Positions 36,087 to 62,369 of a DNA stretch of 64,000 bases are shown piece by piece. Both the position numbers and the translations under genes were made by a program. A model generated the notes under the pieces. The model searched no databases. It was not told the origin of the DNA and saw nothing but the letters and a program-made list of their open reading frames with translations. The stretch spans positions 62,001 to 126,000 of the IMG/VR virus record IMGVR_UViG_3300042868_005134; one strand, given 5' to 3'. Positions within the stretch are counted from its first letter, which is position 1. Each line of letters starts with the position of its first letter.

Positions 36087-36124
36087 TAGTATAATTACTG
36101 TTTTAAACACGATTGGAGCGAACA

Positions 36125-37024: not shown

Positions 37025-37031
37025 CCCTACA

Positions 37032-41296: not shown

Positions 41297-42774
41297 ACAT
41301 CTTGGGGCAAGTTGTTCAACAGCTGACGCAGTTTGGTGCTTTCCACCTTGGCGGCACTGGGTTTGACAATCATGCCTTCTGTAGGGTCACTGCGGCCCGC
41401 GTTGGGACTAGGGTTAAAAGGATCAAATCCTTCTTTAGGCTGACCTTTTTGGAATTCACTCACGGTGCTGTTACGTTTGATATCAGTGAGAATCTGACTG
41501 CTACGTGTGGTAGACTGCGCCGAGTCTTCACTTTGTTCTTCACTGTTAGTAATGCGCAATGTGTCCACATCAAAGTTTAAATCAATTTTCTGTCCCACAC
41601 CACTGCTACTACGTGTCTTCATTAACTGGATTTGATATTTGCCGCGATCACGCATAGCTCTCGATGTAAAGATACCGAACACGTTATCCGCAGTCTGAAT
41701 CTTGCTTAAGCCACCACTAATGTGACTGTGGTCAAATTCAATTTCTTCTACCGCACCACGATTCAACTGTGCCGCAGTGACAAACACACAGTTCTTTTCC
41801 ACTGCTAGGTTACGTAGTTCTTCACTGACATACTTGTCTTTAACAAACAAGTTTTCAGCACTAATCTTCTTGCTCAAGGGCATTAACAAGTCCATATAGT
41901 CCACCAATAGTACATCGCATTTATGTCCCATTTTGACTTCATACTCTTTCAAATAGGCACGTACATCATTGGCTGTTTTGCCGCTCGGCATATATTTGAC
42001 CTGTAGGTGTCCACTCTTTTTGCCAATAACTCTAACCTTCATTTCAACGTCGTCTATTTGACGAAAGATTTCTCTAGTGGGGATTCCTGTTATCATACTG
42101 TCCACACGCATACTCACAAGCTCTTCACTGAGTTCCAGTGTGAGATAAATTACATTAAGCCCGGCGAGTGCGTAATTTACACCAAGGTTGGCCAAAAACA
42201 AACTCTTACCTGCTCCGCTACCGCCAGCAAAGATGTTGAGTTCTCCGCGATTAAACCCACCAAAGAGTTTCTGATCTACTGCTTCCCAGCCTGTACTAAT
42301 CTGTCCATTCTTGTCCTTGATACGCATCAATCTAGCACGGGGATCTAGAAAGTAATCTGTACCCATGTCCTTCTGTAGGCCAATTTGTACTGCTCGTTTG
42401 ATAAGTTCTTCAACTGGGCCGTATTCGCCTTTCTCCAGCAAGTCGGCACTTTCAAGAATGGCTTTCTCCAGACCTTTATGTTTGATAAAGGTTTCAAAAT
42501 CGGCAAGTAGCCAATCAAAGTGTGCTTCTTGAAGACCGTCAGGTATCTTGAACTCCTGTTGTGTGGCGGCGTTAACAATGTCCACTGTGGGAATAATGTT
42601 ATGGTCATCCACGTAGTCTTTTAGGAATTTTGCCACGCCTTGTAGTTTTCTATCAAACAGAGTGCTATCCCAAATGCCTTGGCAGCGAACAAATGTTTCA
42701 GCATCTGCCAGCATCATTTCTAAATATAATTTCTGGATGTCGTATCCGTAATCTGCGTTTTGTCTTGTTGTCAT
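41293..42774 (-). CDS. Replicative DNA helicase (DnaB/T4 gp41-like)
   Basis: GGSGAGKS, TLELSE, VDYMDL, TAAQLNR, KTR. Confidence 0.95.
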   Translation of the reverse strand: MTTRQNADYGYDIQKLYLEMMLADAETFVRCQGIWDSTLFDRKLQGVAKFLKDYVDDHNIIPTVDIVNAATQQEFKIPDGLQEAHFDWLLADFETFIKHKGLEKAILESADLLEKGEYGPVEELIKRAVQIGLQKDMGTDYFLDPRARLMRIKDKNGQISTGWEAVDQKLFGGFNRGELNIFAGGSGAGKSLFLANLGVNYALAGLNVIYLTLELSEELVSMRVDSMITGIPTREIFRQIDDVEMKVRVIGKKSGHLQVKYMPSGKTANDVRAYLKEYEVKMGHKCDVLLVDYMDLLMPLSKKISAENLFVKDKYVSEELRNLAVEKNCVFVTAAQLNRGAVEEIEFDHSHISGGLSKIQTADNVFGIFTSRAMRDRGKYQIQLMKTRSSSGVGQKIDLNFDVDTLRITNSEEQSEDSAQSTTRSSQILTDIKRNSTVSEFQKGQPKEGFDPFNPSPNAGRSDPTEGMIVKPSAAKVESTKLRQLLNNLPQDV

Positions 42775-42792
42775 TTATATATTATACACTCT

Positions 42793-43743
42793 TTAAATTT
42801 TAATAGCAATATGTTTGACTGGTGCCCAGTCTTTTGTTATTCGTTGTTGAGTATGATACAGTACAGCACCCATACTACTACTTGGATCTCCAGGATTAGG
42901 CAAACTCCAAATATATTTAAATTCGGGTTCTACAAAGCGTTTGTTAGCATCACTGTTCATGGCACACCCGCCCATATAAACGAGGCAATCGGCATTGGTT
43001 AATGTTTTAGCCCTATACATAACTTTGTAAATTTCCAGTTCAAATCGTTCCTGTACCGCGGCCGCAATATCGCATTGTTCTTGAATACGTATAGGTTCCG
43101 GACTCCAATTCAATACTCCTCGGTGAAAATTATAGTCTAACACCACCGGTCCTGATTTAAAATATAAACTCAGATCATTTCGAAATCTTTTAGGATCACC
43201 TTGTTTTGCCATCTGCTGTAATAGGTATTCGTCACGTATAGGTTCAAGACCCAGCATTTTTGTAAAGGCACTATAGAACAGACCCAAACTATGTGGATAT
43301 CTCGCACTCCATACTTTTTTCATTTTGCCGTGACGTGCTTCCCAGATTGTAGCACATTCGAATTCTCCTATAGCATCTAGTACCACAACAGCACAGTGAT
43401 TAAAGGGACTAGTATAATATCCAGCGGCAGCATGACTAGCATGATGCGGAGTATACGTAACTGGTATATTTCCCAAACCCCATTTTTTAAGATGACGACT
43501 GGGCAGATTGTCTAATCTAAATGCTGTACTATATTGTTTAGCATATATTTGTCTAGCTTTCTTGACCCAGGGATTTTCATACCAGAAAATACGATCTGGT
43601 TCCCAACCGGTGAACATAGCGTCACTTATTAGTTTGTGTGGATTATCACGAGTCTTATCAACGCTATTATCTATCAGTTGATCGTTGTGAAACACAGCAA
43701 GACTACTGCCGTGATTAAGAGCGTTTATGCCCCACTGTATCAT
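42793..43743 (-). CDS. Carbamoyltransferase N-terminal domain (NodU/CmcH)
   Basis: HHASHAAAGYYTSPF, DAIGE, SLGLFYS, GGCAMN, GD. Confidence 0.88.
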   Translation of the reverse strand: MIQWGINALNHGSSLAVFHNDQLIDNSVDKTRDNPHKLISDAMFTGWEPDRIFWYENPWVKKARQIYAKQYSTAFRLDNLPSRHLKKWGLGNIPVTYTPHHASHAAAGYYTSPFNHCAVVVLDAIGEFECATIWEARHGKMKKVWSARYPHSLGLFYSAFTKMLGLEPIRDEYLLQQMAKQGDPKRFRNDLSLYFKSGPVVLDYNFHRGVLNWSPEPIRIQEQCDIAAAVQERFELEIYKVMYRAKTLTNADCLVYMGGCAMNSDANKRFVEPEFKYIWSLPNPGDPSSSMGAVLYHTQQRITKDWAPVKHIAIKI

Positions 43744-43841
43744 TTGTAAATATACGGATCTTTTTTCCGTAGTTCCTTGCGGCGTTTACGTAATTCAAAA
43801 TAATCTTTTATATTATAGTATATATTTTTTAGCCAAGCCAT
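43740..43841 (-). CDS. 33-aa basic peptide ending KKDPYIYK (not in ORF track)
   Basis: MAWLKNIYYNIKDYFELRKRRKELRKKDPYIYK; overlaps primase end and carbamoyltransferase start. Confidence 0.65.
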   Translation of the reverse strand: MAWLKNIYYNIKDYFELRKRRKELRKKDPYIYK

Positions 43842-44806
43842 TTTTTCATCCTTAGTTGTATTTTTAAAGGCATAGATTCTTTACTACTTGCTATGCTCCA
43901 CAGAGTATATAGCTTTCCGTAAAGTCTCACAGAATCATTCACATCTTTAACACCTTCGGGCCAATCAGGCATGCTAACACTCCATCCCAATTCAATCGCC
44001 TGTTCTGCCATTTTTAATCCTGCCTGATCTCTGTCCGGTACAACTACTATTTCTCGCTGTAGTTGATTTAATAGTGCTATTTGTTGCGGGCCCACTTCGT
44101 TACTCATTACAGCACAACCATCCACACAGATAGCATCTAGCGGTCCTTCTGTTACTATAGTAAATTTACGAGCATAGTCTTGTCGGTCTAAATTAAACAC
44201 ATAACCAGGTTGCTGTTCACTAATGTATTTGACTTTACTATCTCGTATCGATCTGGAGGTATAACCCACAAGTCTACCTTGGTAATAAAATGGCACAATT
44301 AATCTGTTTTGAAACCCATCTTCATCAGTCCAGTGCCACGGGTAATCGTCTACAGTAAAACCTCGTGAATACATATATTCTAAAACGGGTCGTAGTTCTT
44401 CTGGATCACTATCTAACCAAGACAGTATGGGCTTTGAGCCCAAGGGCATTGCTTTATCTATAAAAGTAGGAATGACGTTAACTGTTCCCTTATAAGCAGG
44501 ATCTTCGTTTAGTCTTAGTGCTTCTAAACTACATTTTGTAATTAAATCATCTGCCACATTGAGCCACTGTAACAGTCTTTTAAATTTAATTGAAATCTTT
44601 CTACCAGGTTGCCAACTTGCTTTGAAACCGCAATTAAAACAATGATAGCTTACGCCTTCAGTTATCATTATGCCGCCTCGACCCCTAGTATCGAAGCTAG
44701 ATCCATTGTGATGACAGCAGATAGCATTAAAGCTAATCCACCCGCTGGGGGTTGCTTTTCTCTTGGGAGGTAGGTAAGATGTTACTGTGTCTATGATAAG
44801 GCTCAT
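43829..44806 (-). CDS. DNA primase (T4 gp61-like, Zn finger + TOPRIM)
   Basis: YHCFNCG, TEGPLDA, VPDRDQAG, KDVND. Confidence 0.92.
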   Translation of the reverse strand: MSLIIDTVTSYLPPKRKATPSGWISFNAICCHHNGSSFDTRGRGGIMITEGVSYHCFNCGFKASWQPGRKISIKFKRLLQWLNVADDLITKCSLEALRLNEDPAYKGTVNVIPTFIDKAMPLGSKPILSWLDSDPEELRPVLEYMYSRGFTVDDYPWHWTDEDGFQNRLIVPFYYQGRLVGYTSRSIRDSKVKYISEQQPGYVFNLDRQDYARKFTIVTEGPLDAICVDGCAVMSNEVGPQQIALLNQLQREIVVVPDRDQAGLKMAEQAIELGWSVSMPDWPEGVKDVNDSVRLYGKLYTLWSIASSKESMPLKIQLRMKKWLG

Positions 44807-44815
44807 AGACTAATT

Positions 44816-45643
44816 TTACAATCTAATTGTTATCTTGTCAATGTTTCCGACATTATTAGTTGTTCGAACATATTTGACACGTAACCAATTGGCATCTCTA
44901 TTATATTCCGGATTATCGTATGTTTTTGTAATAGCTGTTGTAGCAGTGGTCACTGCGAATGTTTCTAACGTAGTCCACAAAGTATTTGAACTTACTACGG
45001 CGTCCTCAGTATACTCTACTGTGATTGAACCAGCCAACCCGTCGAATATAAAATCAAGTTCTACGCTGTCGTTGACTGCTGCATCTAGGTAGTTTGGCTG
45101 ACGAATTTCCACAGCATCACTATAATAAGTAATTATTTTTGGTTGTGGATCTGTAACTGTGATAGGAGCAAATCTAGTAATGTAACGTGGCTCAGTATCA
45201 GTGCCCATAGCACTTCCAACTAATTCCATATTGCCTTTAACGCCAAATTGTGTATCCGCATAAAACACAGTTTTAGACGTATCTGAGTTGATTTTATAAA
45301 TTGTAAAATTTAAAAATTGCGGATCTAAATTGACTAGATCAGTTTCTTGAATATTAACTGTTGCCAGGCCTTTGGTAGCACTAGGGGTGACAGTGGCTAC
45401 TAGAAATTCTTTTCCCATGACATCTTGAATACTCATTCTAATAGATTCACCTACACCTAATAGCTCGTCGAGATCTATCCGTTTTTGATCCGAATTTTTT
45501 ACATCCAAGGTAAGTACGTTGTCAACGCCTTGATAAAGTTTTATACGATTTTGATACACAATGTTCCACCTTACAGGAAATAGAGTCACATCCGCGACGA
45601 TGTTTATTCGGTTTGGATATAAATAACTTGAAATTTTTTGCAT
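44816..45643 (-). CDS. Hypothetical (probably virion) protein
   Basis: YQGVDN...KNSDQK; beta-rich. Confidence 0.7.
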   Translation of the reverse strand: MQKISSYLYPNRINIVADVTLFPVRWNIVYQNRIKLYQGVDNVLTLDVKNSDQKRIDLDELLGVGESIRMSIQDVMGKEFLVATVTPSATKGLATVNIQETDLVNLDPQFLNFTIYKINSDTSKTVFYADTQFGVKGNMELVGSAMGTDTEPRYITRFAPITVTDPQPKIITYYSDAVEIRQPNYLDAAVNDSVELDFIFDGLAGSITVEYTEDAVVSSNTLWTTLETFAVTTATTAITKTYDNPEYNRDANWLRVKYVRTTNNVGNIDKITIRL

Positions 45644-45671
45644 TTGGCTAAAAGTCCTTACTACTATTTAT

Positions 45672-46052
45672 ATGGTTAAACTTAGAGATAACATAGAGAA
45701 TCAATTACCCTTTATCAGCGTATTAAATTACGGTGAGCTGGAATATGTGGGAATCATCATCAATCAAGATCAGTTTGTTACGAGTTTTTACGACCTAGAG
45801 TCTATTAAAACTCCTGATGAAAAGACTCTATTATTGGAACTTGGAGAAGTTTGGTGGTGGGAATCAAATCGTCAAATTCCTATAACTATATTTCTTCGTA
45901 AAGAAATTGAACCTTTTAAATATAGCATAAAAACATTCAACAGCAAGGATGTGAGAGTAGTACTCGGGCCAGTGGTCAATCTAATGAATTTAACACTCAA
46001 ACGAATAAAACGAAGGAGTGTTCAATTAGTTAGAAAACCACCAAGTCGTTAA
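45672..46052 (+). CDS. Conserved phage hypothetical protein
   Basis: EYVGIIINQD, LGEVWWWESNRQIPI. Confidence 0.8.
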   Translation: MVKLRDNIENQLPFISVLNYGELEYVGIIINQDQFVTSFYDLESIKTPDEKTLLLELGEVWWWESNRQIPITIFLRKEIEPFKYSIKTFNSKDVRVVLGPVVNLMNLTLKRIKRRSVQLVRKPPSR

Positions 46053-46627
46053 CTATATCCATAACTAATCTGTTCACATATTAAATTCATCTGTACCGCT
46101 ATTGCCATTGCATACGCAATGGCATGCGCCTTCTTAAAATAGTACTCACCATCCTCGGGCTTTGTCCAAATAGTCATCATCACTGTCGTCCAATCTGTCC
46201 CAATCAAGTGTCTCTTGGCGGGTCTTATCATAGCCAAAACTGCCGCTAGTTGGAGTATGCTCGTCGGCTTCATCTGTCGTAGTATTGCCCCGTGGCCGTT
46301 GACGTGAAAAAGTAAACTGCTGAAATCGTCCTGCTCTAAAAGGTCCCATAGTGGTTCAGTCTCCATAAGTTGGGTGAGATGTGCCTCATCTCTGATACCC
46401 TTATAAATGTTAACATTCAAAAAGTCTATTTTAAAGTAGCCTCGTTCTTCTGCCTCTTTGTAATCTATGCCTGATAAGTTATTTACAGGATCGCAAGGAA
46501 TTGTCTGTAAGTAGATGCCAGTATTATGTGTTACTAGTTTAGATTCGTCTCGTCGACTTGCTTTGATGTGTTTTATAACATCAAGGGCCTGGCTGCGGTC
46601 TAAAAAATCAATGTCTATATCTGGCAT
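46049..46627 (-). CDS. Miniature DNA polymerase III alpha (DnaE)-like protein
   Basis: PDIDIDF, GYFKIDFL, LAMIRP, YYFKKAHAIAYA. Confidence 0.88.
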   Translation of the reverse strand: MPDIDIDFLDRSQALDVIKHIKASRRDESKLVTHNTGIYLQTIPCDPVNNLSGIDYKEAEERGYFKIDFLNVNIYKGIRDEAHLTQLMETEPLWDLLEQDDFSSLLFHVNGHGAILRQMKPTSILQLAAVLAMIRPAKRHLIGTDWTTVMMTIWTKPEDGEYYFKKAHAIAYAMAIAVQMNLICEQISYGYS

Positions 46628-46645
46628 TAGTGTTTTGTCTCTGAT

Positions 46646-47344: not shown

Positions 47345-47820
47345 TAAAATAATTTAGCAATTTCTTCTTTGCTATAACCGAGATCCTCTGCCATAGCTTT
47401 TAACTCTGATAACTCCGATAGTTTTGCCAATAATTCGATTTCGTCATCTTTCATATCAGGATATACTAAATTTAAAAACTTAATACGCTTGTTATCTTTT
47501 TTCTTTTTGAATCCAATCCATTCGTGATAGAATATCTTTTTGCTTTCATGGGCGCACATGCTAAGTAACTGCCACATTAACTTAGGATGATTTTGTAAAT
47601 CATACCAGTATTTGTTAAAGTATTCATTAACAGTAAGAACAAAATGTTCTTGTGTATCTCTAGGTTGACCTTTAACATTACTAATGTATCGATTGAGAAT
47701 AAAGAACTCTTGTTTAAGACTTTTTCTTTGAAGGTCGTCCATTTCGTCCCACATTGTGCGGGCACCCATGTCGGCAGCGGCCATTTTTTCTTTTAGTTCA
47801 ATTTTCTCACTCATCAGCAT
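47344..47820 (-). CDS. Putative clamp-loader small subunit (gp62-like)
   Basis: FILNRYIS...HPKLMWQLL...WI; replication-cluster context. Confidence 0.45.
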   Translation of the reverse strand: MLMSEKIELKEKMAAADMGARTMWDEMDDLQRKSLKQEFFILNRYISNVKGQPRDTQEHFVLTVNEYFNKYWYDLQNHPKLMWQLLSMCAHESKKIFYHEWIGFKKKKDNKRIKFLNLVYPDMKDDEIELLAKLSELSELKAMAEDLGYSKEEIAKLF

Positions 47821-48387: not shown

Positions 48388-48388
48388 A

Positions 48389-48895: not shown

Positions 48896-48933
48896 GTTGT
48901 TATAATACAACATTTAGGTAATGTTGTCAACCT

Positions 48934-51562: not shown

Positions 51563-51596
51563 AGTAAATTATAACATACGTTTGTAATAATGTCAA

Positions 51597-52052
51597 TTAT
51601 AGTGTGGCATCTTCCATGCCAGCCACTCGTAATTTTATAATATTGCTAAGTTGCCACTGTTTGATGTCAAGCGCCTTGGTAATGCCCAGCCATTTGTTGC
51701 GTAGCAAGGCAAACTCGTTGATAATTTTTTCATAATCAACAACGTCTGCCTCACCTTCCACAAATTTTTCACAATCCCTTGATGATAAAGCTCGTTGGTA
51801 CGTCTCTAAATACTTTCTGAACATTTGACTTTTCAGTCTACGTAGTTCTATATTCAAATATTCTAATATTGCTTCGATTTCTTGTAGTTGACTAAATCGT
51901 TGTTCCACAATACCCGGCATACTTGCTGAAGCTTTTTCTATGTTGCCCGAAATACGAGCGTCGCCTCTAGCTGCCTGTAATTCGGTTTCATAATATGCCA
52001 CAGCATCTGGAATATTTGAAATATCCTTAGAAACTTTTGAATACCAACTCAT
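51597..52052 (-). CDS. uvsY: Recombination mediator UvsY-like
   Basis: KYLETYQRALSSRD.EKFVEGE...KQWQLSNI.KLR.AG; next to uvsX and uvsW. Confidence 0.8.
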   Translation of the reverse strand: MSWYSKVSKDISNIPDAVAYYETELQAARGDARISGNIEKASASMPGIVEQRFSQLQEIEAILEYLNIELRRLKSQMFRKYLETYQRALSSRDCEKFVEGEADVVDYEKIINEFALLRNKWLGITKALDIKQWQLSNIIKLRVAGMEDATL

Positions 52053-52301
52053 TTAATCCTCGTCTTCATCAAAATCCCAATTATCTTCCTCGTCTACACT
52101 TTCTTCACTATCTTGATCAAGATAATATTCGATTGCTTCGTCAAGATCTGAATCGTGGCCCAGCGAATCTTTTAAAACCTTGTCGCTGATGCCATGATCA
52201 GCAAGCAAATCCACATAGCGTTCAGCTAACGACTCCACTGCTTTTTTGTCAGCATATTCTTTAAATAGAAGCCATATATCGGCAATTTGATTTTCGTTCA
52301 T
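52053..52301 (-). CDS. Acidic hypothetical protein
   Basis: Coupled between uvsX and uvsY. Confidence 0.75.
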   Translation of the reverse strand: MNENQIADIWLLFKEYADKKAVESLAERYVDLLADHGISDKVLKDSLGHDSDLDEAIEYYLDQDSEESVDEEDNWDFDEDED

Positions 52302-53371
52302 TATTCGGTCTCCTGATCTCCGTCACTAGTAGTTATCTCGGAAGGAATAATTTCACCGTGATTAGTAACATCTTTCATGATGACATCTAATCCAGATTTT
52401 TCATTTCGCTCCCATGGCTTACGGAATTGTTTGATAATTTCACCATCTTTGGTAATATAAACAAGACTATTACCTTCTTTCTTTAACATGGTCTTGCCTT
52501 CAAACAAATCAACTAATCCGCTATAAGGACTCATGCCAGTAGTGTATGGAATTTCTACTTGTACAGTTTCAAACGGCTTTGAATACCGTGTTTTCATAAT
52601 TTTACATGCGGCGCGAATACCATTAACTGATGTAGTCTTATTGCCATCAGCATCAGTCTTCAATTTTAATTTACGCATGGCAACAACAATAGAGCTGGCA
52701 TAGATAAAGCCCTGGCCGCCGCTAATCTTGTCATCTGGATCGAACATATCCTGACTTGCGTATGTGTGATTGGTACAAACTAATCCAACATTGTATTGAC
52801 CAATCATATTCACTGTATTACGTACAAGACTGGTAAGTGCTTTAGGTTTACGGCCCATGTCACCTTTCATATCACCTGCTTCGAACTGATTAACATCTGT
52901 AGGAGTCAACAACATGCCCAACGAATCAATAACAAACAGGACCTTAGGTCGGTCTTCCATAGCCTTATACTCTTTCATAAATTCACTAATAGTTTTAGCT
53001 ACGTCGTCAATCATGGCCATGTTAAGTTTCAACAATTTTTTATCGCTAGTATCAACACCTAATGCGTGTAACCACGATTCGTCCAATGCGTTTTCACTGT
53101 CAACTAGAATGACATAGATACCCTGTTCTTGTGCGTTCCTGATAATGTTACCGGAACAAATATAACTTTTGCCGGCACCACTTTCACCGGCAAACACCGT
53201 AACCTTACCCAAAGGAATACCCTTGTTAAAATCACCACTAATTAGATAGTTAAGGGCAAAGTTGCCAGTGCTAATCCAATCTGTTGGGTCGTTAAATCCC
53301 ACGCCCAATCCTTCAATACTCTTTGTTAGAGTTTTTCTAAATTTACTTAAATCAAATGCTTTTGTAGCCAT
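52301..53371 (-). CDS. uvsX: RecA-like recombinase UvsX
   Basis: GESGAGKS, VDSENA, VIDSLG, SGGQG. Confidence 0.93.
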   Translation of the reverse strand: MATKAFDLSKFRKTLTKSIEGLGVGFNDPTDWISTGNFALNYLISGDFNKGIPLGKVTVFAGESGAGKSYICSGNIIRNAQEQGIYVILVDSENALDESWLHALGVDTSDKKLLKLNMAMIDDVAKTISEFMKEYKAMEDRPKVLFVIDSLGMLLTPTDVNQFEAGDMKGDMGRKPKALTSLVRNTVNMIGQYNVGLVCTNHTYASQDMFDPDDKISGGQGFIYASSIVVAMRKLKLKTDADGNKTTSVNGIRAACKIMKTRYSKPFETVQVEIPYTTGMSPYSGLVDLFEGKTMLKKEGNSLVYITKDGEIIKQFRKPWERNEKSGLDVIMKDVTNHGEIIPSEITTSDGDQETE

Positions 53372-53431
53372 TATTCTTCCTTTTATAATTCGGTAGCTTG
53401 TTTTAACCACTACGATCTACTCGTAGGTGGC

Positions 53432-53458
53432 AATGAGGGCACGAGGGCCCTCATTTTT
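53432..53458. terminator. Hairpin/terminator between gp32 and uvsX
   Basis: AATGAGGGC-ACGAGG-GCCCTCATT. Confidence 0.55.
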
Positions 53459-53466
53459 AAAAGCTA

Positions 53467-54438
53467 TTATTGCTTTTGACGATTGCGAATCATCGCAAGA
53501 ATGTCTTCTGCTCTGCCGCCGTTAGCGGAAGGTGCAGCTTCTTGTTTGGGTGCTACTGGAGCTACCTTAGCAACAGTAGTGTCATCTTCCCATGGAGCAT
53601 CTTCAGATTCAGCCACTTTGGTCTTGGCTACTGGATCGCCTGTTGCTTGGCTCATGCCAGCAGGCTTGTAGTATTGGCTCCAGCGATCCATATCAAATGG
53701 TTCGCCTTCAACACTTGCTTCGAACATTTCTTTGATAACCTTAAGTTCGACATCGCCTGGCTTTTTAGGCAGGAAGTCTTTGAGATTATACAGGCCGTGC
53801 TCTTTTAAAGCAGACTGTTCAACATCGCTTAATGGACGTTCACGACGGCTCCACTTGCTAGTAGAGTAGTCAGCATAACCACCTTTGCTAGTCTTGATAA
53901 GTTTGAAGTCAACGCCATGAAGTAGGTCTGTTGGCAGGTTGTCCATTTCTGGATCAAGCAATGCGCCACGAATCAATTGAAAGATTTGTGGGCCGATAAT
54001 GAATCGACGAATTGGGTTCGAAGCTGGATTTTCTTCTTTAAGGCCGTCTTCAACAACAAAACCTTGGAAGATATAGCTACGCTTTTTCCAATACTTATTG
54101 GCCATTTGTTTCAGCGATTCGTCTTTGTACCATGGACGCACTTCTGCTAGAATAGGGCATGTGCCGCCATACATTTCCATACAAGGTACTTGGACTTGGA
54201 CTGGACGACTATCTGTGCTGCCACTAACTCCGGCGAATGGCAATTTAATCATTGCTCGTTCTGCCCAGAAAAATGTGTTGTCAGAGTCACCGTCTGGTAA
54301 GAATCTTACTGTTGCTTCAGATCCTTCTTTGAGATTCCAGAATGGATAAATTGAATTATCACCACCGGAACGTTGATTGTCGGAACCACGTGATTCCTGT
54401 TCTTTGAGCTTTGCTCGGATTTCTGCTAAAGATGCCAT
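53467..54438 (-). CDS. Single-stranded DNA-binding protein (gp32-like)
   Basis: VRFLPD, CPI, YWKKRSY, YADYSTSKW; acidic tail. Confidence 0.88.
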   Translation of the reverse strand: MASLAEIRAKLKEQESRGSDNQRSGGDNSIYPFWNLKEGSEATVRFLPDGDSDNTFFWAERAMIKLPFAGVSGSTDSRPVQVQVPCMEMYGGTCPILAEVRPWYKDESLKQMANKYWKKRSYIFQGFVVEDGLKEENPASNPIRRFIIGPQIFQLIRGALLDPEMDNLPTDLLHGVDFKLIKTSKGGYADYSTSKWSRRERPLSDVEQSALKEHGLYNLKDFLPKKPGDVELKVIKEMFEASVEGEPFDMDRWSQYYKPAGMSQATGDPVAKTKVAESEDAPWEDDTTVAKVAPVAPKQEAAPSANGGRAEDILAMIRNRQKQ

Positions 54439-54574
54439 AATAATCTCCTATTGTTAGCCTTTAATATTTTATGTGCCTATATTGTTTTAGAACCCTCTAA
54501 AACAAAAAACGCATACATGTTATTGTATACGTTTTTATTTATCTTAGCAAGAGAAATCTTGCTTAAAAATGGTT

Positions 54575-56665: not shown

Positions 56666-56673
56666 ACTGATAT

Positions 56674-58269
56674 TTATCCTAAATTAGACGAAATAAAGAT
56701 AGGCATCGGCATTTCCCAGTCATCGTCTGCGTGTCCTGAATGGCTGCTAATACTGTCAAACACCCGTTCATCCCAGTCCGCTAACACCTGGCTCATGCGT
56801 ACCATTAGCAGTGTGGCACTGACTAAATCGTCTTGTTCTCCCGATTTCGCTTTGAATGTTACACCGGCTGCTATATATGCTTTTAGTTCAGATATCAAGG
56901 GCTTGCTGTTAATTTTCATTTTACCGCTTTCGATTAAGAACTTTAGGCGGGCACTTGCTGAAATCTTACTGCCATGCGTGGTATTAAATCCTTTACGAAA
57001 TTTACGTACATGACCTTTTCGTACTGGTTCGCTCACAAACAAGCCTGCAAAATTTTCTTCGCCTATGTCCTTGATACAAACCAATCCTGCTTCGCCCACT
57101 GTGTTGTTTTCTATAGTCCAATAGAGATTGTTGACAGTTTCACCTGTTTCGTCTTGTATATATTTTAATATTTCCCTAAGAACCTTGATTTGTCCTTGGA
57201 TGGGTGTTAAATTGTGTTGCCACTCGGCCACTTGCGTAAAACTGGGTAATTCAAATACTTCAATTGCAGCACTATTGCCGCCTGTACCTAAACTAGGGTC
57301 TAATGTAACTGCGTACATGCTGTCTCGATTTAATTGTTTATACCAGCGAGTTTGACCCATTCTTTGCGTGGGTTCCTTGCCTTCTAGTCCCGCAAGACAG
57401 ATACTGTTAATAAGTGTTTCGTCGTAGACTAAGAATTCACAATTATATTCTCGGCGAAAACGCTCTTCACCAATACGGCCACGCTCTGTACGTTCCCATA
57501 TTTCATCTCTATCGGGGTGCTCATGCCACTTACAAGTGAATGGAAAAAACCCGTTTATGCCAGTTTCTTGTTCATTACCAAATTCGTCAAACTTCTTGTT
57601 AGCTTCTTTCCAAATAGTGGCAAATGTATCTTCGTCACTGTTAGGAGTTGAGGTAATGATAGCCTTACCACCAGTTGCCAGTGTGGGAGATATTGATGTC
57701 CAAAATTCTTCTGCGATGTTGGGTGGCACAAATGCAAACTCGTCACAGTATAGTAATGATATACTCATACCACGACCAGTGTTGCCCGTAGTTGTTGTAC
57801 TAACAATACGAGACCCGTTGTCAAATTCAATAGAACCTTTATTGTAGTTTGTCACTCCCGATCGAATAAAATCAGGACACAACTCATAGGCATATCGTAT
57901 ACGTTGCATAATTTCTTGCGAACCCGTATACTTGTGAGCTGAGATTAAGATAGTCTGGTCAGGATGGAACATGGCATACCATAGCAAATAGCCAGCAGCA
58001 CATGTTGTCTTGCCCATCTGCCTGGGTAACATGTTAATATTAAATCTATGTCCGTGATATGCATCTAGCAGTCTTGTTTGAAACTCAAATGGGTCAAACA
58101 ACATTTTGCCTTTGACTGGATGCTGTATATAAAAATAATGGCTACAAAAATAATGATATCCGTTATCAGGATCTGAGCAGGCAGCAAGATGCCGAATGTG
58201 TTCTTCGGTGAATGTTTCTCTTGCGTGTGCTTTTTTAGTTAGTACGCCGTCTAGACTTTTATTTGCCAT
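56674..58269 (-). CDS. Terminase large subunit (gp17-like)
   Basis: PRQMGKTT, YCDEFAF, TSTPN, DPSLG, DDLVSA. Confidence 0.95.
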   Translation of the reverse strand: MANKSLDGVLTKKAHARETFTEEHIRHLAACSDPDNGYHYFCSHYFYIQHPVKGKMLFDPFEFQTRLLDAYHGHRFNINMLPRQMGKTTCAAGYLLWYAMFHPDQTILISAHKYTGSQEIMQRIRYAYELCPDFIRSGVTNYNKGSIEFDNGSRIVSTTTTGNTGRGMSISLLYCDEFAFVPPNIAEEFWTSISPTLATGGKAIITSTPNSDEDTFATIWKEANKKFDEFGNEQETGINGFFPFTCKWHEHPDRDEIWERTERGRIGEERFRREYNCEFLVYDETLINSICLAGLEGKEPTQRMGQTRWYKQLNRDSMYAVTLDPSLGTGGNSAAIEVFELPSFTQVAEWQHNLTPIQGQIKVLREILKYIQDETGETVNNLYWTIENNTVGEAGLVCIKDIGEENFAGLFVSEPVRKGHVRKFRKGFNTTHGSKISASARLKFLIESGKMKINSKPLISELKAYIAAGVTFKAKSGEQDDLVSATLLMVRMSQVLADWDERVFDSISSHSGHADDDWEMPMPIFISSNLG

Positions 58270-58283
58270 ATTGTTATTTACTG

Positions 58284-58310
58284 AAAAAAATAGCCTCCGA
58301 AGAGGCTATT
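58284..58310 (-). terminator. Intrinsic terminator with UUCG loop
   Basis: AATAGCCTC-TTCG-GAGGCTATTTTTTT. Confidence 0.85.
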
Positions 58311-58345
58311 TGGCACTATAAACAGAGTGCTAACTGCGACGAATC

Positions 58346-59332
58346 TTATCGTTCCATACGATCGTTATAATCGTTACGCATACGTTCTTTTTTATCTTTC
58401 AATGCTTGTAAACGCTTCTTAGCTGACTCGTCTCCGTCTGCTGCTTTTTTCTTTAAGCTATCTTCTTGTGATTTTTCAAGGCCGCGACGATGTTCAGCAT
58501 CTACTGAGTTAGGATTGTATGCTTCTTTCATTTTTGATAAAAGTTTTTTACCCGGTTCTGCTTTTTTATCAGCGGCCATTTTATCTTTTGCTGCTTGAAC
58601 TTTAGCTTTGGATTCTGAACTGTTCCTGTCAACATACTTGCTGTGTGCTTTTTCCTTAGGGCCTGAACCTTCTCTTAATTTGATATCGCTATACAGACCT
58701 TTGAGCTGTTCAGCAATTCGCTCTGCCATGGGTTGCATTGGGTTGTCGCCGCCTGCCACTTTTGGAAATGTTTGCTTTGGTTTATTTAAATCGCCGCCAC
58801 CTTGTGGCTGAGTAACTGCGTCGATGCCGTAATACATTTCGTCTCCCAATGGCATCCTTTCTTCTTCGTCGTGTCCTGTATCGCCCTGGTCTCCGCCTAA
58901 CGCTTTCATAACAATTGGCATTTCAGAATCCATTCCATCATGTCCGTGATCCATGCCTGGCATTTCTAAATCCATTTGGCCGCCTTCATCGCCGTCTAGA
59001 TTGCGTAGTATATCCATTAGATCACGAATGCCGTTTGCGCCGGCACCGTTCATGCTTAGATTCATTGACACAGAATCTTGCTGCGGAGGTGTTCTCATAC
59101 CCATCATGCTACCAGGCATGTCCATGCCGCATTCTTCAATGAATGATTCATCAACTTCCTTTTCTTTTTCTTTGTCTTTAGGAAAAGCAGCTTTCATTCG
59201 ACTGCCGTAGTACTCGTCTTTACCGCTTTCGATTTCGCCGTCACCGTCGTAATCTTTCTTGGCTTTGTCGCTTTCTTGTACCGATTGTTGATCCAGGGTA
59301 TTTAAGCGTGATAATAATTCTTGAAAATTCAT
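58346..59332 (-). CDS. Acidic low-complexity hypothetical protein (possible internal head protein)
   Basis: DYDGDGEIES..DEY, GGDLNKPK, GGDNPM motifs. Confidence 0.75.
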   Translation of the reverse strand: MNFQELLSRLNTLDQQSVQESDKAKKDYDGDGEIESGKDEYYGSRMKAAFPKDKEKEKEVDESFIEECGMDMPGSMMGMRTPPQQDSVSMNLSMNGAGANGIRDLMDILRNLDGDEGGQMDLEMPGMDHGHDGMDSEMPIVMKALGGDQGDTGHDEEERMPLGDEMYYGIDAVTQPQGGGDLNKPKQTFPKVAGGDNPMQPMAERIAEQLKGLYSDIKLREGSGPKEKAHSKYVDRNSSESKAKVQAAKDKMAADKKAEPGKKLLSKMKEAYNPNSVDAEHRRGLEKSQEDSLKKKAADGDESAKKRLQALKDKKERMRNDYNDRMER

Positions 59333-59343
59333 GATTGTTCCTT

Positions 59344-59946
59344 TTATTTCTTAGTAGAAAATAAACTCTTAGCAGGACCTACCTTAGGCATTGCTTCTGC
59401 TTTTTCTTTGTGCGTACTCTTTGCTAATAGCTTTTCGTTAACACCTTTTATTTGTGTTAACTGTTTATCCTTGGATGCTTTAGCAACGTCTTTCAAGAAA
59501 CTACTAATCATCTTGTCTCCAAACAATCCTTGATTGTTGGACTTTTCATAACCTTGCGACAATAATGCTTGACCTTTGTCATCTAACGTCATGTTTTCTG
59601 CTTCAATGGCAGCGTTTGCTTCTTCGAGCGGTGTACGTACACGAATTGATTCTCTACCAATACCAGTACAGTTTGCTAACAACTCAGATAGCACAGAACT
59701 TGTAGCTGGATAATCTAATTCTACTTCAAACACTGTCATTGAACTGTTCTTAAGTGTGGGAAAGTCTAATAGGTGAGATTGAATAGGAGTATTTTTACCT
59801 TTGGTAAATCTGCTTACTTTGTATTGTTGTAGTGCAGTTTCCATAACATCTTCGCAGTTATCCGGAAGGTCGCCCGCTACTTTAATTTTAAAAGTATATT
59901 TTTTCTCTTCTACACTTTCTTGTAGGTATGCGCTGAATAGTTTCAT
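59344..59946 (-). CDS. Conserved hypothetical protein
   Basis: YLQES..KYTFKIKVAG, TPIQ..DFP. Confidence 0.75.
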   Translation of the reverse strand: MKLFSAYLQESVEEKKYTFKIKVAGDLPDNCEDVMETALQQYKVSRFTKGKNTPIQSHLLDFPTLKNSSMTVFEVELDYPATSSVLSELLANCTGIGRESIRVRTPLEEANAAIEAENMTLDDKGQALLSQGYEKSNNQGLFGDKMISSFLKDVAKASKDKQLTQIKGVNEKLLAKSTHKEKAEAMPKVGPAKSLFSTKK

Positions 59947-59963
59947 ATTATAATCCTGATACC

Positions 59964-60440
59964 TTATTTATTCATATTTTTAAGTTTCTCAATCAAACTA
60001 TTACGGTCTGAAATGATAACTCCACTGCCTGGAATGTCAATGCCTTCTTCTGGGCCAGCTTTTTGATCAAGTTGTTGTTTTTTAAGCTGAAGTTCAATCA
60101 TCTTAAGTTTTTTGTCAATTTTAGCACTTTTTGCATCTATAGCATTTTTAAGCATGCCGCCCGCCACTTCAAAAATACGTCCGCTGTATCTAGCTTCTAC
60201 ATTCATACCCAAATCCATTAGATCATCATAGGCATCTGTAGCTCTTTGTGCTAGTGCGTCAAATTCTGCGTCGGCTGCATCGCCCAGTCCCTTGACAGCG
60301 GGTAAACTAGCGGCAATTTTGTCAAATTCTGATAAATCTCTAAGAAAAGGTGGCGGCATAACTTTTGCCGATTCCTTCTCTGATTCTTTAATCAGTTTCT
60401 TATTTTCAGGTAAGTTGAGCAGTTCTTCTAATTTTTTCAT
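59964..60440 (-). CDS. Putative terminase small subunit (gp16-like)
   Basis: RIFEVAGGMLKNAIDAK helical motif; near the large terminase. Confidence 0.55.
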   Translation of the reverse strand: MKKLEELLNLPENKKLIKESEKESAKVMPPPFLRDLSEFDKIAASLPAVKGLGDAADAEFDALAQRATDAYDDLMDLGMNVEARYSGRIFEVAGGMLKNAIDAKSAKIDKKLKMIELQLKKQQLDQKAGPEEGIDIPGSGVIISDRNSLIEKLKNMNK

Positions 60441-60448
60441 AATAATAC

Positions 60449-60886
60449 TTATCTATTTCTACCGTTAATGAATAAGTCTTGTTCGTTGATTACACGGAAC
60501 TTTATTCCTTGTGCTTTACACCATGCCATGGCAGCTCGCCATTTGGCCACGTTTCTAACATATTGAATTTGATTATTTTTATTCTTGCCTACTTTTTCTC
60601 GTAGTGTTTGATTTTGCGGTTTAACTTCAATTAGCTCCACAAACATTTTGCCATTTTTATCGGCATACTGAATAAAAAAATCCGGAATATAGATAGTTTG
60701 CTTGCCAGTAATAGGACATCTGTAAGGAATACTGATAGCCTCACTAGCCCATTTTTGTATACTAGGATGTGTGTCGCAAAATCTCATGAACGCAAACTCC
60801 CAAGAGCTGCGATATGTTGGAGTTTTCTTTCCTACATATTTCTCTGGGTTTGTTATTGCGAATTTACCTTGAGCAAATCGACTCAT
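60449..60886 (-). CDS. Head completion nuclease (gp4-like)
   Basis: NPEKYVG..YRSSWE, WASE, YIPDF, EVKP. Confidence 0.9.
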   Translation of the reverse strand: MSRFAQGKFAITNPEKYVGKKTPTYRSSWEFAFMRFCDTHPSIQKWASEAISIPYRCPITGKQTIYIPDFFIQYADKNGKMFVELIEVKPQNQTLREKVGKNKNNQIQYVRNVAKWRAAMAWCKAQGIKFRVINEQDLFINGRNR

Positions 60887-61251
60887 ACTCTAATGTTTCT
60901 GCTCTCTGTAGTTTCTTCAATTGTTAATAATTTAAAACCAAGAGTACTAGTTTTTTCTCTATAAGCGTTCAGTACTTGTGTAACCACATTACTAAGTTGA
61001 GCATCATTGAGAGTTTTGATAGTGTCGAGAAGTTCCATAACTTCAACGTTATCTATCTTGGACTGAGTTAGTAATACTATTGCGGTACTACGTGCAGCTT
61101 CTAGATCCCACCCTCTTTTTAAAAAGAATCCTAATACAATATCTATTTGATTAGATGGAAATGTTATTTGCTGTCTAAAATATTTGTCGAAGAAACTTTT
61201 AACTTCTCCGCTGCTATCATCATTAATTTTTGATGGTAAATTATAAGCCAT
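60883..61251 (-). CDS. Hypothetical virion-cluster protein
   Basis: Coupled ORF. Confidence 0.75.
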   Translation of the reverse strand: MAYNLPSKINDDSSGEVKSFFDKYFRQQITFPSNQIDIVLGFFLKRGWDLEAARSTAIVLLTQSKIDNVEVMELLDTIKTLNDAQLSNVVTQVLNAYREKTSTLGFKLLTIEETTESRNIRV

Positions 61252-62321
61252 TATGGTCCGCCGCCTCCACCAAATTGTATAGGTTTAGCAGATGTTGTTG
61301 CTGATGGATTATTCACAGGAAAACTTATTGTGTTTTGTCCACTTAATCCTATTACAGCCGCACTTTGAAGACCGCGGACGGCTGCGCCTGTTAATTCACT
61401 TCTTACACCTGTTGATGTTAACGATTTGGCATTTTGATATGTATTTACTGCAGCGATAGCGGTGCTTATAAAATTTGCCGGACTGTCAAATGCCTTGCCA
61501 GATCCTAATGCGCCAAACACTGCTTCGGCTCCAGCAAGGAAACCACCTTGACCAAACAGTGTTCTTGTGCCGCCACCGTATATACTTAACGGACTTGGCA
61601 TAGTGTCATAATGTTCGACACCAAATCCTGGAGGATTACCTTGGCTCACGTAACCTGTGTTATAGGTAACTGCTTCGTAATCTAGTTGCATGGATTGTTC
61701 AGCACTTTGTCCTGAACTCATGTCCATAGCGTCATGATTCCAACTCTTGATAATAGGATTTACTAATTTGTAACTATACCAAGCCTTTTTTGCCATCTGA
61801 TAAATTGTAATATCATTAAAAAACGGCATACTGCTGTTGTTATCTAGACCGTACCTAGAATTCATAAAAGCAGGAGCTTTCATGGCGTTTCTGTTATAGG
61901 CTGTACCATTTTTGGCAGCTTGACTGTCTCCATAGTAGTAACCAAAATAATTTTGCCATAGCTGACCAACTACACCTAAATTGTCATCATGAAAGGCAAT
62001 ATTAATAGGTTGGTATTCTATTTTATTTTGTACAACTTTTTTCCTGTTATACTGATTTAGTGTTTCAGTTTGTATAGTAAACTTAGGAAGATCACATTTC
62101 TTTACCAGCATATTGATTTCGTTTCTATGCTGATAGGTAAAGTTTAAACTTTTTAATGCGTTGGTATTGATGTTAAACACCACATGAAATAAAAACTTTT
62201 GCTTAGGAGCAAGTCTTAAATCACTGTCTACATGGAGCCGTGAAGCATGTTGAAAATCTCCCACATTTCCGCGGGGATTAGTTGCACCACTTACAAATTG
62301 ATTCCAGGCTTTGCTTGTCAT
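61251..62321 (-). CDS. Tail-tube-fold baseplate/tube initiator protein (gp48/gp54-like)
   Basis: LPKFTI..LNQYNRK, FHDD, LVNPII; adjacent to the tube gene. Confidence 0.65.
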   Translation of the reverse strand: MTSKAWNQFVSGATNPRGNVGDFQHASRLHVDSDLRLAPKQKFLFHVVFNINTNALKSLNFTYQHRNEINMLVKKCDLPKFTIQTETLNQYNRKKVVQNKIEYQPINIAFHDDNLGVVGQLWQNYFGYYYGDSQAAKNGTAYNRNAMKAPAFMNSRYGLDNNSSMPFFNDITIYQMAKKAWYSYKLVNPIIKSWNHDAMDMSSGQSAEQSMQLDYEAVTYNTGYVSQGNPPGFGVEHYDTMPSPLSIYGGGTRTLFGQGGFLAGAEAVFGALGSGKAFDSPANFISTAIAAVNTYQNAKSLTSTGVRSELTGAAVRGLQSAAVIGLSGQNTISFPVNNPSATTSAKPIQFGGGGGP

Positions 62322-62369
62322 GTAATTATTTATCGACTACAGAAAACTACGTAGTTAATGAAAAGTCGT

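What the first reader, a model, noticed from the sequence alone, without database searches (positions are those of the whole stretch)
42774..62332. Replication and late genes appear leaderless, so would escape an anti-SD RNA
Seen: sigma70-type promoters place the ATG 6-8 nt after the -10 hexamer for helicase (42774), primase (44806), 51562, and outside this span 12038, 23328, 1535 and 25266. A TAAATA/TAAGTA element lies about 4-7 nt before the ATG, with no SD, for genes starting at 56665, 58269, 60440 and 62321, and outside this span 2869, 6184, 7759, 9448, 19104, 37713 and 37850. Established: TATAAATA is the T4 gp55 late promoter, with the start site a few nt downstream. Inference: the phage partitions translation initiation by temporal class, with SD-led early mRNAs and leaderless middle/late mRNAs. 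This would complement the anti-SD RNA and allow SD-dependent translation to be suppressed selectively.
Basis: partly seen in the sequence, partly recalled or inferred. Interest (0 to 1): 0.75.

Follow-up and report, generated by a model that had tools for sequence, protein, structure and literature searches.

The report
Promoters fused to start codons
About one gene in ten of this 383-kb lake-water jumbo phage, including its helicase, primase and terminase, has a promoter placed so close to the ATG that the mRNA should begin at the start codon with no ribosome-binding leader.

Summary
All 18 listed sites exist.

- **Host-type promoters:** the -10 hexamer lies 5-7 nt before the ATG: 8 full matches in the window against 0.04 expected.
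- **Late-type promoters:** TAAATA or TAAGTA lies 4-7 nt before the ATG.
- **Spacing:** genome-wide, both classes show two spacing peaks, one leaderless and one with an SD-bearing leader.
- **Controls:** T4 and PA5oct, both more AT-rich, lack the leaderless peak. A complete relative with about 70% nucleotide identity over its alignable part has it.
- **Conservation:** across metagenomic relatives each gene keeps its own mode: primase 49/54 and TerL 64/70 leaderless, SSB 32/32 SD-led.

No transcription start was mapped; the metatranscriptome contigs were uninformative.

- Late and replication genes are mixed. SSB, UvsX, a tail-tube gene and most downstream cistrons use SD sequences.
- The "anti-SD RNA" (window 37066-37195) is conserved. 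Its loops match the special early ribosome-binding site GGAGCGAA, not SD sequences in general.
- Most SD-led later genes would therefore escape it too.

The closest precedent is Thermus phage phiYS40. This is a new variant of a known kind.

The parts
42775..42809 (-). Helicase promoter: -35 TTGCTA at 42804-42809, a 17-nt spacer, -10 TATAAT at 42781-42786, then 6 nt to ATG 42774 (DnaB-like helicase, 41293-42774).
   Evidence: In relatives, 45 of 58 distinct upstream sequences keep a TATAAT-like hexamer 5-7 nt before the ATG.
44807..44841 (-). Primase promoter: TTGACA at 44836-44841, N17, TAAAAT at 44813-44818, then 6 nt to ATG 44806 (DnaG-type primase, 43829-44806).
   Evidence: In relatives down to 47% amino-acid identity, 49 of 54 keep the layout while the hexamer itself varies among TAAAAT, TATAAT and TATACT.
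48896..48930 (-).
   Evidence: The PHROG alignment runs from residue 1 of this start.
51563..51596 (-). Consensus TTGACA-N17-TATAAT, then 5 nt to ATG 51562 (391 aa, no family match).
56666..56676 (-). TAAATA at 56671-56676, then 5 nt to ATG 56665 (696-aa virion protein). The TAA of the motif is the TerL stop codon.
   Evidence: 68 of 70 relatives keep it.
58270..58311 (-). Terminator hairpin plus T-run at 58284-58311, TAAATA at 58275-58280, then 5 nt to ATG 58269 (large terminase, 56674-58269).
   Evidence: 64 of 70 relatives keep TAAATA or TAAGTA 4-7 nt before the ATG, behind a hairpin whose stem sequence differs between contigs.
60441..60451 (-). TAAGTA at 60446-60451, then 5 nt to ATG 60440 (158 aa, TerS-like).
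   Evidence: 45 of 57 relatives keep it: TAAGTA in 42 and TAAATA in 3. Ten have a leadered TAAATA instead.
62322..62332 (-). TAAATA at 62327-62332, then 5 nt to ATG 62321 (356 aa, tail-tube-like).
52052..54460 (-).
   Evidence: SSB is SD-led in 32 of 32 relatives.
58346..59975 (-). Late genes with leaders: 59946 has TAAATA about 18 nt upstream plus AGGA; 59332 has AAGGAA.
   Evidence: g59946 is leadered in 54 of 59 relatives and leaderless in 5. g59332 is SD-led in 28 of 29.
1501..1537 (+). Outside the span: TTGACA-N17-TATAAT, 5 nt, ATG 1535 (104 aa).
12036..12073 (-). Outside the span: TTGACA-N16-TATAAT, 7 nt, ATG 12038 (278 aa).
23326..23363 (-). Outside the span: TTGACA-N17-TATAAT, 6 nt, ATG 23328 (71 aa).
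25231..25268 (+). Outside the span: TTGACA-N17-TATAAT, 6 nt, ATG 25266 (109 aa). It lies at the head of the early cluster.
2867..39343 (.). Other TAAATA-N4-7-ATG starts outside the span: 2869(-), 6184(-), 7759(-), 9448(-), 19104(-), 37713(-), 37850(+) and 39333(-).
   Evidence: Functions: endonuclease (2869), phosphoesterase (6184), peptidase (19104); the rest have no family match.
25018..36125 (+). Early cluster: about 19 consensus sigma70 promoters, each with a 20-34-nt leader (mostly 26-32 nt), most carrying the RBS AGGAGC(G)AAC before small genes.
37066..37195 (+). Probable "anti-SD RNA": two hairpins whose loops both carry GATTCGCTCCCGG (37088-37100 and 37158-37170). The second hairpin is a terminator followed by T8.
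   Evidence: MFE -53.4 kcal/mol, z = -3.1. 13 more homologues keep an invariant 11-nt loop motif with varying stems.

Best explanation
At about 40-50 heads of transcription units, roughly 10% of its genes, the phage places the -10-like promoter element so that RNA polymerase should start at the A of the ATG. There are 13-20 such promoters of the host sigma70 type and about 28 of the (G/A)ATAAATA type, which is presumably read with the phage's gp55-like sigma factor. The first cistron would then be a leaderless mRNA, translated through its 5'-terminal AUG without SD/anti-SD pairing. Downstream cistrons use SD sequences or stop-start coupling.

The layout is a per-gene trait conserved across a clade of freshwater jumbo phages. 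It is absent from T4 and PA5oct. It is not a rule for a temporal class.

Shown here:
- the motifs, their geometry and their enrichment;
- conservation gene by gene;
- absence from the outgroups;
- the gp55-like gene.

Inferred:
- the actual start sites, and that these mRNAs are translated as leaderless;
- the purpose. My best guess is SD-independent expression of the first cistron, often of catalytic proteins (helicase, primase, exonuclease, polymerase parts, TerL, TerS), that also happens to be immune to anything acting on RBS sequences.
For: Geometry:
- The modal spacers of 6 nt (TATAAT) and 5 nt (TAAATA) put the A of the ATG at the textbook +1.
- The base before the ATG is a pyrimidine in 30/34 leaderless starts against 93/179 SD-led starts.

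Two discrete states in both promoter classes:
- A trough lies between the peaks. For sigma70 there are 0 genes at 9-16 nt.
- The pattern is reproduced in the complete relative G001.

Same element in both states:
- Gene-proximal TAAATA, whether leaderless or leadered, has A at -1 in 57-69% of cases against 14% for other copies in this genome. In G001 the leaderless class shows it less strongly, at 41%.

No room for any other arrangement:
- Two divergent radical-SAM gene pairs have only 32 and 37 bp between their ATGs, each ATG with its own TAAATA 5-8 nt upstream.
- A terminator sits directly upstream of the TerL TAAATA in nearly all relatives.

Conservation per gene.

Controls: T4 and PA5oct lack the short-spacer peak. 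The PA5oct and Phosso TerL genes are SD-led or coupled.

Start codons are supported by PHROG alignments that begin at residues 1-3 and by N-termini conserved from the first Met while the upstream DNA diverges.

gp55-like sigma: phrog_12791, E = 7e-77.
Against: - No transcription start has been mapped. The only RNA data, Logan contigs of lake metatranscriptomes, are fragmentary, come from related strains and give no 5' ends.
- One contig (X26, 58177-58334) crosses the TerL ATG by 65 nt. Read-through RNA, or carried-over DNA, therefore exists there.
- For 56665 and 7759 the TAAATA overlaps the stop codon of the upstream gene, so coupling on a polycistronic RNA is an alternative route.
- About 3 sigma70 promoters with an ATG at +1 head only mini-ORFs of 2-14 codons. 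That is roughly what chance predicts, so an ATG at +1 is not always meaningful.
- The host is unknown, so its capacity for leaderless translation is untested.
- My gene calls are crude: 156 of 369 starts fell in no class.
Confidence: 0.7

Rival explanations
1. The phage divides initiation by time: SD-led early mRNAs against leaderless middle and late mRNAs. An anti-SD RNA can then shut down SD-dependent translation while later genes escape.
For: - Early genes are uniformly SD-led.
- A conserved RNA with RBS-complementary loops lies at the end of the early cluster.
- Leaderless starts pair worst with it.
- phiYS40 provides a precedent for this kind of temporal split (PMC3594737).
Against: - About 39 leadered and about 28 leaderless TAAATA promoters coexist.
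- SSB, UvsX, tail tube 63041, 59332, 61251 and most downstream cistrons are SD-led and conserved as such.
- The RNA matches GGAGCGAA. GGAGC is found in 14/18 early-region SDs but in only 9/163 other SDs.
- Its two best targets are SD-led genes behind leadered TAAATA promoters.
- A general block of SD pairing would hit at least half of the phage's own later genes.
Confidence: 0.12
2. The motifs are genuine promoters or junction signals, but most protein comes from longer read-through transcripts, through stop-start coupling or 70S re-initiation. Truly leaderless transcripts would be a minor species.
For: - TAAATA overlaps the upstream stop codon at 56665 and 7759.
- The primase-to-43743 junction is an ATGA overlap with no SD.
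- A metatranscriptome contig bridges the TerL ATG.
Against: - The divergent pairs with 32-37 bp between ATGs cannot be coupled.
- Helicase, primase, 51562, 12038, 1535 and 25266 have complete -35/-10 promoters.
- A terminator precedes the TerL motif in nearly all relatives.
- The two-peak spacing is hard to explain if the start site were irrelevant.
Confidence: 0.15
3. Chance: AT-rich hexamers happen to lie near ATGs in an AT-rich genome.
For: The raw count of TAAATA-N4-7-ATG in the window is only about 2.7 times the shuffle mean. TAAGTA is not enriched within this genome.
Against: - 8 matches against 0.04 expected for the sigma70 pattern.
- The hexamer-permutation control.
- The more AT-rich T4 and PA5oct show no short-spacer peak.
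- Per-gene conservation across dozens of diverged relatives.
Confidence: 0.01

Closest known systems
Thermus phage phiYS40 (Sevostyanova et al. 2007, J Mol Biol 366:420). Cited here through the review PMC3594737 and the reference list of PMC12340547.
   Same: A large lytic phage that relies on host RNA polymerase. Its early genes have leaders, and many later genes have a -10-like element right before the start codon, giving leaderless mRNAs. It is thought to bias the host translation apparatus, raising IF2 and lowering IF3.
   Different: - In phiYS40 most middle and late transcripts are leaderless, and its host phylum uses leaderless mRNAs widely (PMC12340547).
- Here only about 40% of late-type promoters are leaderless.
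- Two promoter types are involved here, one of them T4-like.
- The host is probably a proteobacterium.
- I could not read the original paper, which is not held.
T4-type late promoters (TATAAATA with gp55), and the ATAAATA motif reported before structural genes of the jumbo phages CBB and GAP32 (PMC5259590).
   Same: - The same core motif.
- A gp55-like sigma factor is encoded.
- The motif precedes structural and packaging genes.
- A leadered class has T4-like spacing of 17-32 nt to the ATG.
   Different: T4 and PA5oct have essentially no gene with the motif 3-8 nt before the ATG, 1 and 2 genes against 28 here. The CBB paper does not contain the word "leader". No gp45 match was found, but that search's control was silent. 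gp33 was not searched.
Lambda cI mRNA from PRM, the textbook leaderless phage mRNA (PMC10491246, listed).
   Same: A sigma70 promoter whose +1 is the A of the AUG, with no SD.
   Different: That is a single regulatory gene in a temperate phage. Here there are dozens of genes in a lytic jumbo phage, conserved across a clade.
T4 RegB endoribonuclease, which inactivates early mRNAs by cutting GGAG in their SD sequences (PMC3014915).
   Same: It selectively shuts off early translation through a sequence signature in early ribosome-binding sites. This is the role the anti-RBS RNA may play here.
   Different: RegB is a protein nuclease. Here the candidate is a small RNA with two complementary loops. 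No RegB match was found, though that search's control was silent.
Phage-encoded ribosomal protein bS21 (PMC6375957, PMC7162821, PMC9723584).
   Same: This phage and its complete relative G001 both encode bS21.
   Different: No link between phage bS21 and leaderless mRNAs has been shown, here or in those papers.

Membership tests
Leaderless mRNA | The transcription start lies at, or within a few nt of, the start codon. | tested here: inconclusive
   Only the geometry supports it: modal spacers of 6 and 5 nt. The metatranscriptome contigs gave no 5' ends.
Leaderless mRNA | No SD sequence upstream of the start codon. | tested here: met
   32 of 34 called leaderless starts have no AGGA, GGAG or GAGG at 3-12 nt. 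The two exceptions overlap the promoter motif itself.
Leaderless mRNA | A -10 element 5-8 nt upstream of an AUG start codon. | tested here: met
   48 of 55 motif-associated candidate starts are ATG.
T4-type (gp55) late promoter | A TATAAATA-like -10 motif with no -35 element. | tested here: met
   The consensus is (G/A)ATAAATA, shared by the leaderless and leadered classes. There is no conserved -35.
T4-type (gp55) late promoter | The phage encodes a gp55-family sigma factor. | tested here: met
   G000:C1:179845-180669(-). T4 gp55 matches it at E = 5.7e-7. phrog_12791 matches at E = 7e-77 and phrog_234 at E = 3e-24.
T4-type (gp55) late promoter | The co-activators gp33 and the sliding clamp gp45. 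| tested here: inconclusive
   phrog_223 (gp45) found no match, but its control was also silent. gp33 was not searched. The CBB authors found neither protein.
T4-type (gp55) late promoter | The motif drives late genes (structural and packaging). | tested here: met
   TerL, TerS-like, tail tube and virion proteins. It also precedes an endonuclease, a peptidase and radical-SAM genes. Timing was not measured.
phiYS40-type temporal split of initiation modes | Early genes are leadered, and most middle and late genes are leaderless. | tested here: not met
   The early part holds. Later genes are mixed: about 39 leadered against about 28 leaderless TAAATA promoters, and SSB, UvsX and others are SD-led.
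phiYS40-type temporal split of initiation modes | The host initiation machinery is shifted (IF2 up, IF3 down). | not testable with these tools
   The phage encodes no IF3_C or S1 domain. It does encode bS21.
General anti-SD RNA (16S 3'-end mimic) | Complementarity to the SD core shared by all SD-led genes. | tested here: not met
   The loops match GGAGCGAA(U). The median duplex energy is -13.2 kcal/mol for early genes against -6.6 for other SD-led genes.

The most novel reading that the evidence does not exclude
The clade may run a three-part programme on translation initiation:
1. A small RNA with two invariant loops masks GGAGCGAA-type ribosome-binding sites. These belong to the early genes and to two late genes that match it over 12-13 nt.
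2. A phage bS21 alters how ribosomes use the anti-SD tail.
3. About 10% of genes, including the replication and packaging enzymes, are leaderless and so indifferent to both.

All three parts co-occur in the two complete genomes examined.
Probability: 0.2. Interest if true: 0.85.

Novelty: new variant of a known kind. Interest (0 to 1): 0.62.

Why it matters
Leaderless phage mRNAs are known from single genes such as lambda cI, and from Thermus phages whose hosts use them routinely. Here there are dozens, fused to two promoter types. One is the T4-like late promoter, for which I found no report of such fusions. They are conserved gene by gene across a large uncultured clade of lake jumbo phages.

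- **Annotation:** gene callers that expect an SD will misplace these starts.
- **Testability:** it gives a sequence-only way to predict transcription starts in uncultured phages.
- **Translational control:** together with the conserved anti-RBS RNA and the phage bS21, it offers a concrete system for asking how a phage sorts its own messages at the ribosome.

Tried and rejected
- Megablast of the TerL region against GenBank phages found nothing.
- Relatives cannot be drawn for a virus record.
- Read laying on 56500-62450 with four lake metatranscriptomes returned fragmentary contigs from related strains and no 5'-end information.
- The PA5oct promoter supplement is not held, and neither is the phiYS40 paper.
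- RegB (PF10715) and gp45 (phrog_223) searches of the genome found nothing, but their controls were silent, so they say nothing.
- IF3_C and S1 are absent, with working controls.
- A trans anti-SD RNA was first sought with GTTCGCTCCTT. That found only the antisense of the early SD sequences. The real candidate turned up through GCTCC words in non-coding stretches.
- The start-codon test does not discriminate: ATG in 87% of leaderless against 70% of strong-SD candidate starts.
- Host inference is weak. The phage bS21 sits in viral clusters, and its nearest cellular relatives are Burkholderiales MAGs at 49-53% identity. TATAAT-N5-7-ATG counts in those MAGs are too small to read.
- The idea that leaderless marks low-copy enzymes was considered and left open. 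It fits helicase, primase, exonuclease, polymerase parts, TerL and TerS against SSB and UvsX. It does not fit the tail-tube-like and virion proteins.

Full report
**What the window is.** The window is bases 62001-126000 of a single 383,411-bp contig with GC 0.41. The contig is found in lake-water metagenomes. The window holds three tRNA genes and no other Rfam match. By large terminase, the nearest isolates are the Pseudomonas jumbo phage PA5oct group (55.6% amino-acid identity), Sinorhizobium phage Phosso (50%) and the GAP32/Rak2-like phages (43%). In addition, 58269 is the large terminase, 60440 is TerS-like, 62321 is tail-tube-like and 56665 is a virion protein.

Every one of the 18 listed sites is present. 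For the sigma70 class the layout is TTGACA (TTGCTA for helicase), 16-17 nt, TATAAT or TAAAAT, 5-7 nt, ATG. For the other class it is TAAATA, or TAAGTA at 60440, then 4-7 nt, ATG, with no SD. I found two more sites, 48895(-) and 39333(-). In the window, a full sigma70 promoter followed by an ATG at 5-7 nt occurs 8 times against 0.04 expected from shuffles. TAAATA-N4-7-ATG occurs 12 times against 4.5, and 11 of the 12 are the first ATG of an ORF.

**Genome-wide pattern.**
- The distance from the -10 hexamer to the next ATG that opens an ORF has two peaks, at 5-7 nt and at 25-32 nt.
- The same holds for TAAATA.
- With one script applied to all first ATGs of ORFs of at least 60 aa, TAAATA gives 28 genes at 3-8 nt, 10 at 9-16 nt and 39 at 17-32 nt. 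sigma70 gives 13, 0 and 33 in the corresponding bins.
- TAAATA is the rarest of the 15 hexamers of its composition, yet by far the most frequent just before gene starts.
- Applied to T4 (GC 0.35) and PA5oct (GC 0.33), the script finds only the long-spacer peak. The short bins hold 1 and 0 genes for T4 and 2 and 2 for PA5oct.
- The TerL regions of PA5oct and Phosso use leadered TAAATA promoters with SD sequences, or coupling.
- Chance from AT-richness is therefore excluded. The trait is specific to a clade, not a general property of T4-like late promoters.

**Evidence that the ATG is the start site.**
- In relatives the modal spacers are 6 nt after TATAAT and 5 nt after TAAATA. From established knowledge of sigma70 promoters, and of T4 late promoters as I recall them (motif at about -13 to -6), this puts the A of the ATG at +1.
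- The base before the ATG is a pyrimidine in 30 of 34 leaderless starts against 93 of 179 SD-led starts (Fisher p = 5e-5). This fits the usual preference for a pyrimidine at -1 and a purine at +1.
- Gene-proximal TAAATA copies, leaderless or leadered, share an extended (G/A)A before the motif that other copies lack. Both states therefore look like the same element. It resembles the ATAAATA motif reported before structural genes of CBB and GAP32 (PMC5259590).
- The genome encodes a gp55-like late sigma factor.
- The trough between the two peaks makes biological sense, because very short leaders serve neither initiation route.
- Two divergent pairs of radical-SAM genes have only 32 and 37 bp between their ATGs, each with its own TAAATA. 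That leaves no room for a leader or for coupling.

**Comparative evidence.** IMG/VR holds hundreds of relatives. Counting distinct upstream sequences:

| Gene | Mode kept in relatives |
|---|---|
| Helicase | 45 of 58 leaderless |
| Primase | 49 of 54 leaderless |
| TerL | 64 of 70 leaderless |
| Virion protein 56665 | 68 of 70 leaderless |
| TerS-like | 45 of 57 leaderless |
| g59946 | 54 of 59 leadered late promoter |
| g45643 | 21 of 22 leadered late promoter |
| g59332 | 28 of 29 SD-led |
| SSB | 32 of 32 SD-led |

- Primase orthologues down to 47% identity keep the layout while the hexamers drift.
- TerL orthologues keep a terminator hairpin of varying sequence, then TAAATA, then 4-6 nt.
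- A few lineages have switched state. Examples are TerL with AAGGAAG and g59946 with a leaderless TAAATA, so the two modes interconvert.
- The one other complete genome, G001 (364,554 bp, about 70% nucleotide identity over its alignable part), reproduces both two-peak histograms.

**What could not be shown.** No start site was mapped. The four metatranscriptome runs gave short contigs from related strains and no 5' ends. One contig crosses the TerL ATG by 65 nt, which may be read-through RNA or DNA carry-over. Three of the eight sigma70 matches head mini-ORFs of 2, 5 and 14 codons, which is about what chance predicts among roughly 55 promoters. My gene calls are crude: 156 of 369 starts were unclassified.

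**The interpretation.** The early part is right. About 19 consensus promoters in window 25000-36200 each carry a 20-34-nt leader (mostly 26-32 nt) with a strong SD. The later part is not a partition.
- The gene at 43743 overlaps the primase stop as ATGA.
- Only the first cistron of a unit can be leaderless.
- The sigma70 leaderless genes are an exonuclease, two DNA-polymerase parts, a 1122-aa transferase, the helicase and the primase. Their timing is unknown.

**The "anti-SD RNA".** It is almost certainly window 37066-37195(+), just after the last early gene.
- It has two hairpins with identical loops carrying GATTCGCTCCCGG. The second hairpin is a terminator.
- Thirteen further homologues keep the 11-nt loop motif unchanged while the stems vary.
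- The loops are complementary to GGAGCGAA(U). GGAGCGA occurs 23 times in the genome, 19 of them within 12 nt of an ATG. GGAGC marks 14 of 18 early-region SD sequences but only 9 of 163 others.
- Predicted pairing is strong for early genes (median -13.2 kcal/mol), weak for other SD-led genes (-6.6) and weakest for leaderless starts (-3.5).
- Leaderless genes would therefore escape, but so would most SD-led later genes.
- The two best matches, 12-13 nt, are SD-led genes behind leadered TAAATA promoters.
- The nearest functional analogue is T4 RegB, which inactivates early mRNAs at GGAG in their SD sequences (PMC3014915).

**Comparison with what is known.**
- Leaderless phage mRNAs are established: lambda cI (PMC10491246), and above all Thermus phage phiYS40. 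There most middle and late transcripts are leaderless and IF2/IF3 levels shift (PMC3594737). Its host phylum uses the -10-next-to-ORF layout widely (PMC12340547).
- phiKZ has no leaderless transcripts (PMC8244752).
- The PA5oct and CBB papers do not mention any.
- Three things differ here: a T4-like late motif is fused to the ATG, two promoter classes are involved, and the use is partial and gene-specific.
- The phage and G001 also encode bS21. Others have proposed that phage bS21 favours phage mRNAs (PMC7162821; PMC9723584). Any link to the leaderless genes is speculation.
- The nearest cellular bS21 sequences are from Burkholderiales MAGs, a weak hint about the host.

**Verdict.** This is a new variant of a known kind. 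My confidence that these genes are really expressed as leaderless mRNAs is about 0.7, pending 5'-end mapping.

Noticed in passing
window 37066-37195 (+): A conserved small RNA candidate with two hairpin loops carrying GATTCGCTCCCGG; the second hairpin is a terminator. The loops are complementary to the early-class RBS GGAGCGAA. IMG/VR holds 13 more homologues with an invariant loop motif and varying stems.
   Followed up: partly
G000:C1:375988-376263 (+) and G000:C1:3036-3515 (-), outside the window: The RBSs of a 91-aa hydrophobic protein (phrog_18771) and a 159-aa protein with a signal-like N-terminus (phrog_35372) match the RNA loop over 12-13 nt (-28.5 and -26.5 kcal/mol). Both lie behind leadered TAAATA promoters, so the RNA may also control late genes.
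   Followed up: partly
window 24760-24889: Seven DnaA-box-like 9-mers (TTATCCACA or TGTGGATAA, one of them TGTGGACAA) lie within 130 bp at the point where the coding strand switches. This is a likely replication origin using host DnaA. A consensus sigma70 promoter at 24945-24973 (-) transcribes through it.
   Followed up: no
window 23700-24560: A roughly 850-bp stretch without a convincing ORF. It holds four copies of AGACCCCGCTG (about 23765-24080) and many CACTATA(TA)G-like repeats (24320-24520).
   Followed up: no
G000:C1:10787-10945 (-), outside the window: The phage encodes ribosomal protein bS21 (PF01165, E = 8.8e-16; about 80 aa). It is SD-led and is the second gene behind a TAAGTA-N6-ATG start. 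The complete relative G001 has it too. The nearest cellular homologues are from Burkholderiales MAGs (49-53% identity).
   Followed up: partly
G000:C1:222369/222402 and 227916/227955, outside the window: Four radical-SAM genes sit in two back-to-back divergent pairs with only 32 and 37 bp between the ATGs. Each ATG has its own TAAATA 5-8 nt upstream.
   Followed up: partly
window 18352-18389 (-), 24936-24973 (-), 32852-32889 (+): Consensus sigma70 promoters whose +1 ATG opens only a mini-ORF of 5, 14 and 2 codons. The first ends 8 nt before gene 18328, which has no SD, so re-initiation is conceivable.
   Followed up: no
window 54439-54490 (-): The leader of the SSB gene carries repeated AGGC words in an A-rich context. 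These are conserved in relatives. It could be an autoregulatory operator like that of T4 gene 32.
   Followed up: no
window 5-447: Tandem 27/54-nt repeats lie inside the 613-aa ORF on the minus strand (start at 1179). They put repeated CTCCTT on the plus strand. They are coding repeats, not an RNA gene.
   Followed up: no
window 25018-36125 (+): Early promoters share more than the two hexamers. The initial transcribed region (A/T)ACA(C/T)(T/A)TA and the RBS AGGAGC(G)AAC recur, suggesting a duplicated promoter-leader cassette or a shared regulator.
   Followed up: partly
G000:C1:264734-265279 (-) and 288283-288783 (-), outside the window: Two short ORFs (181 and 166 aa) match different parts of DNA polymerase profiles, and each has its own leaderless sigma70 promoter. 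The polymerase may be split.
   Followed up: no
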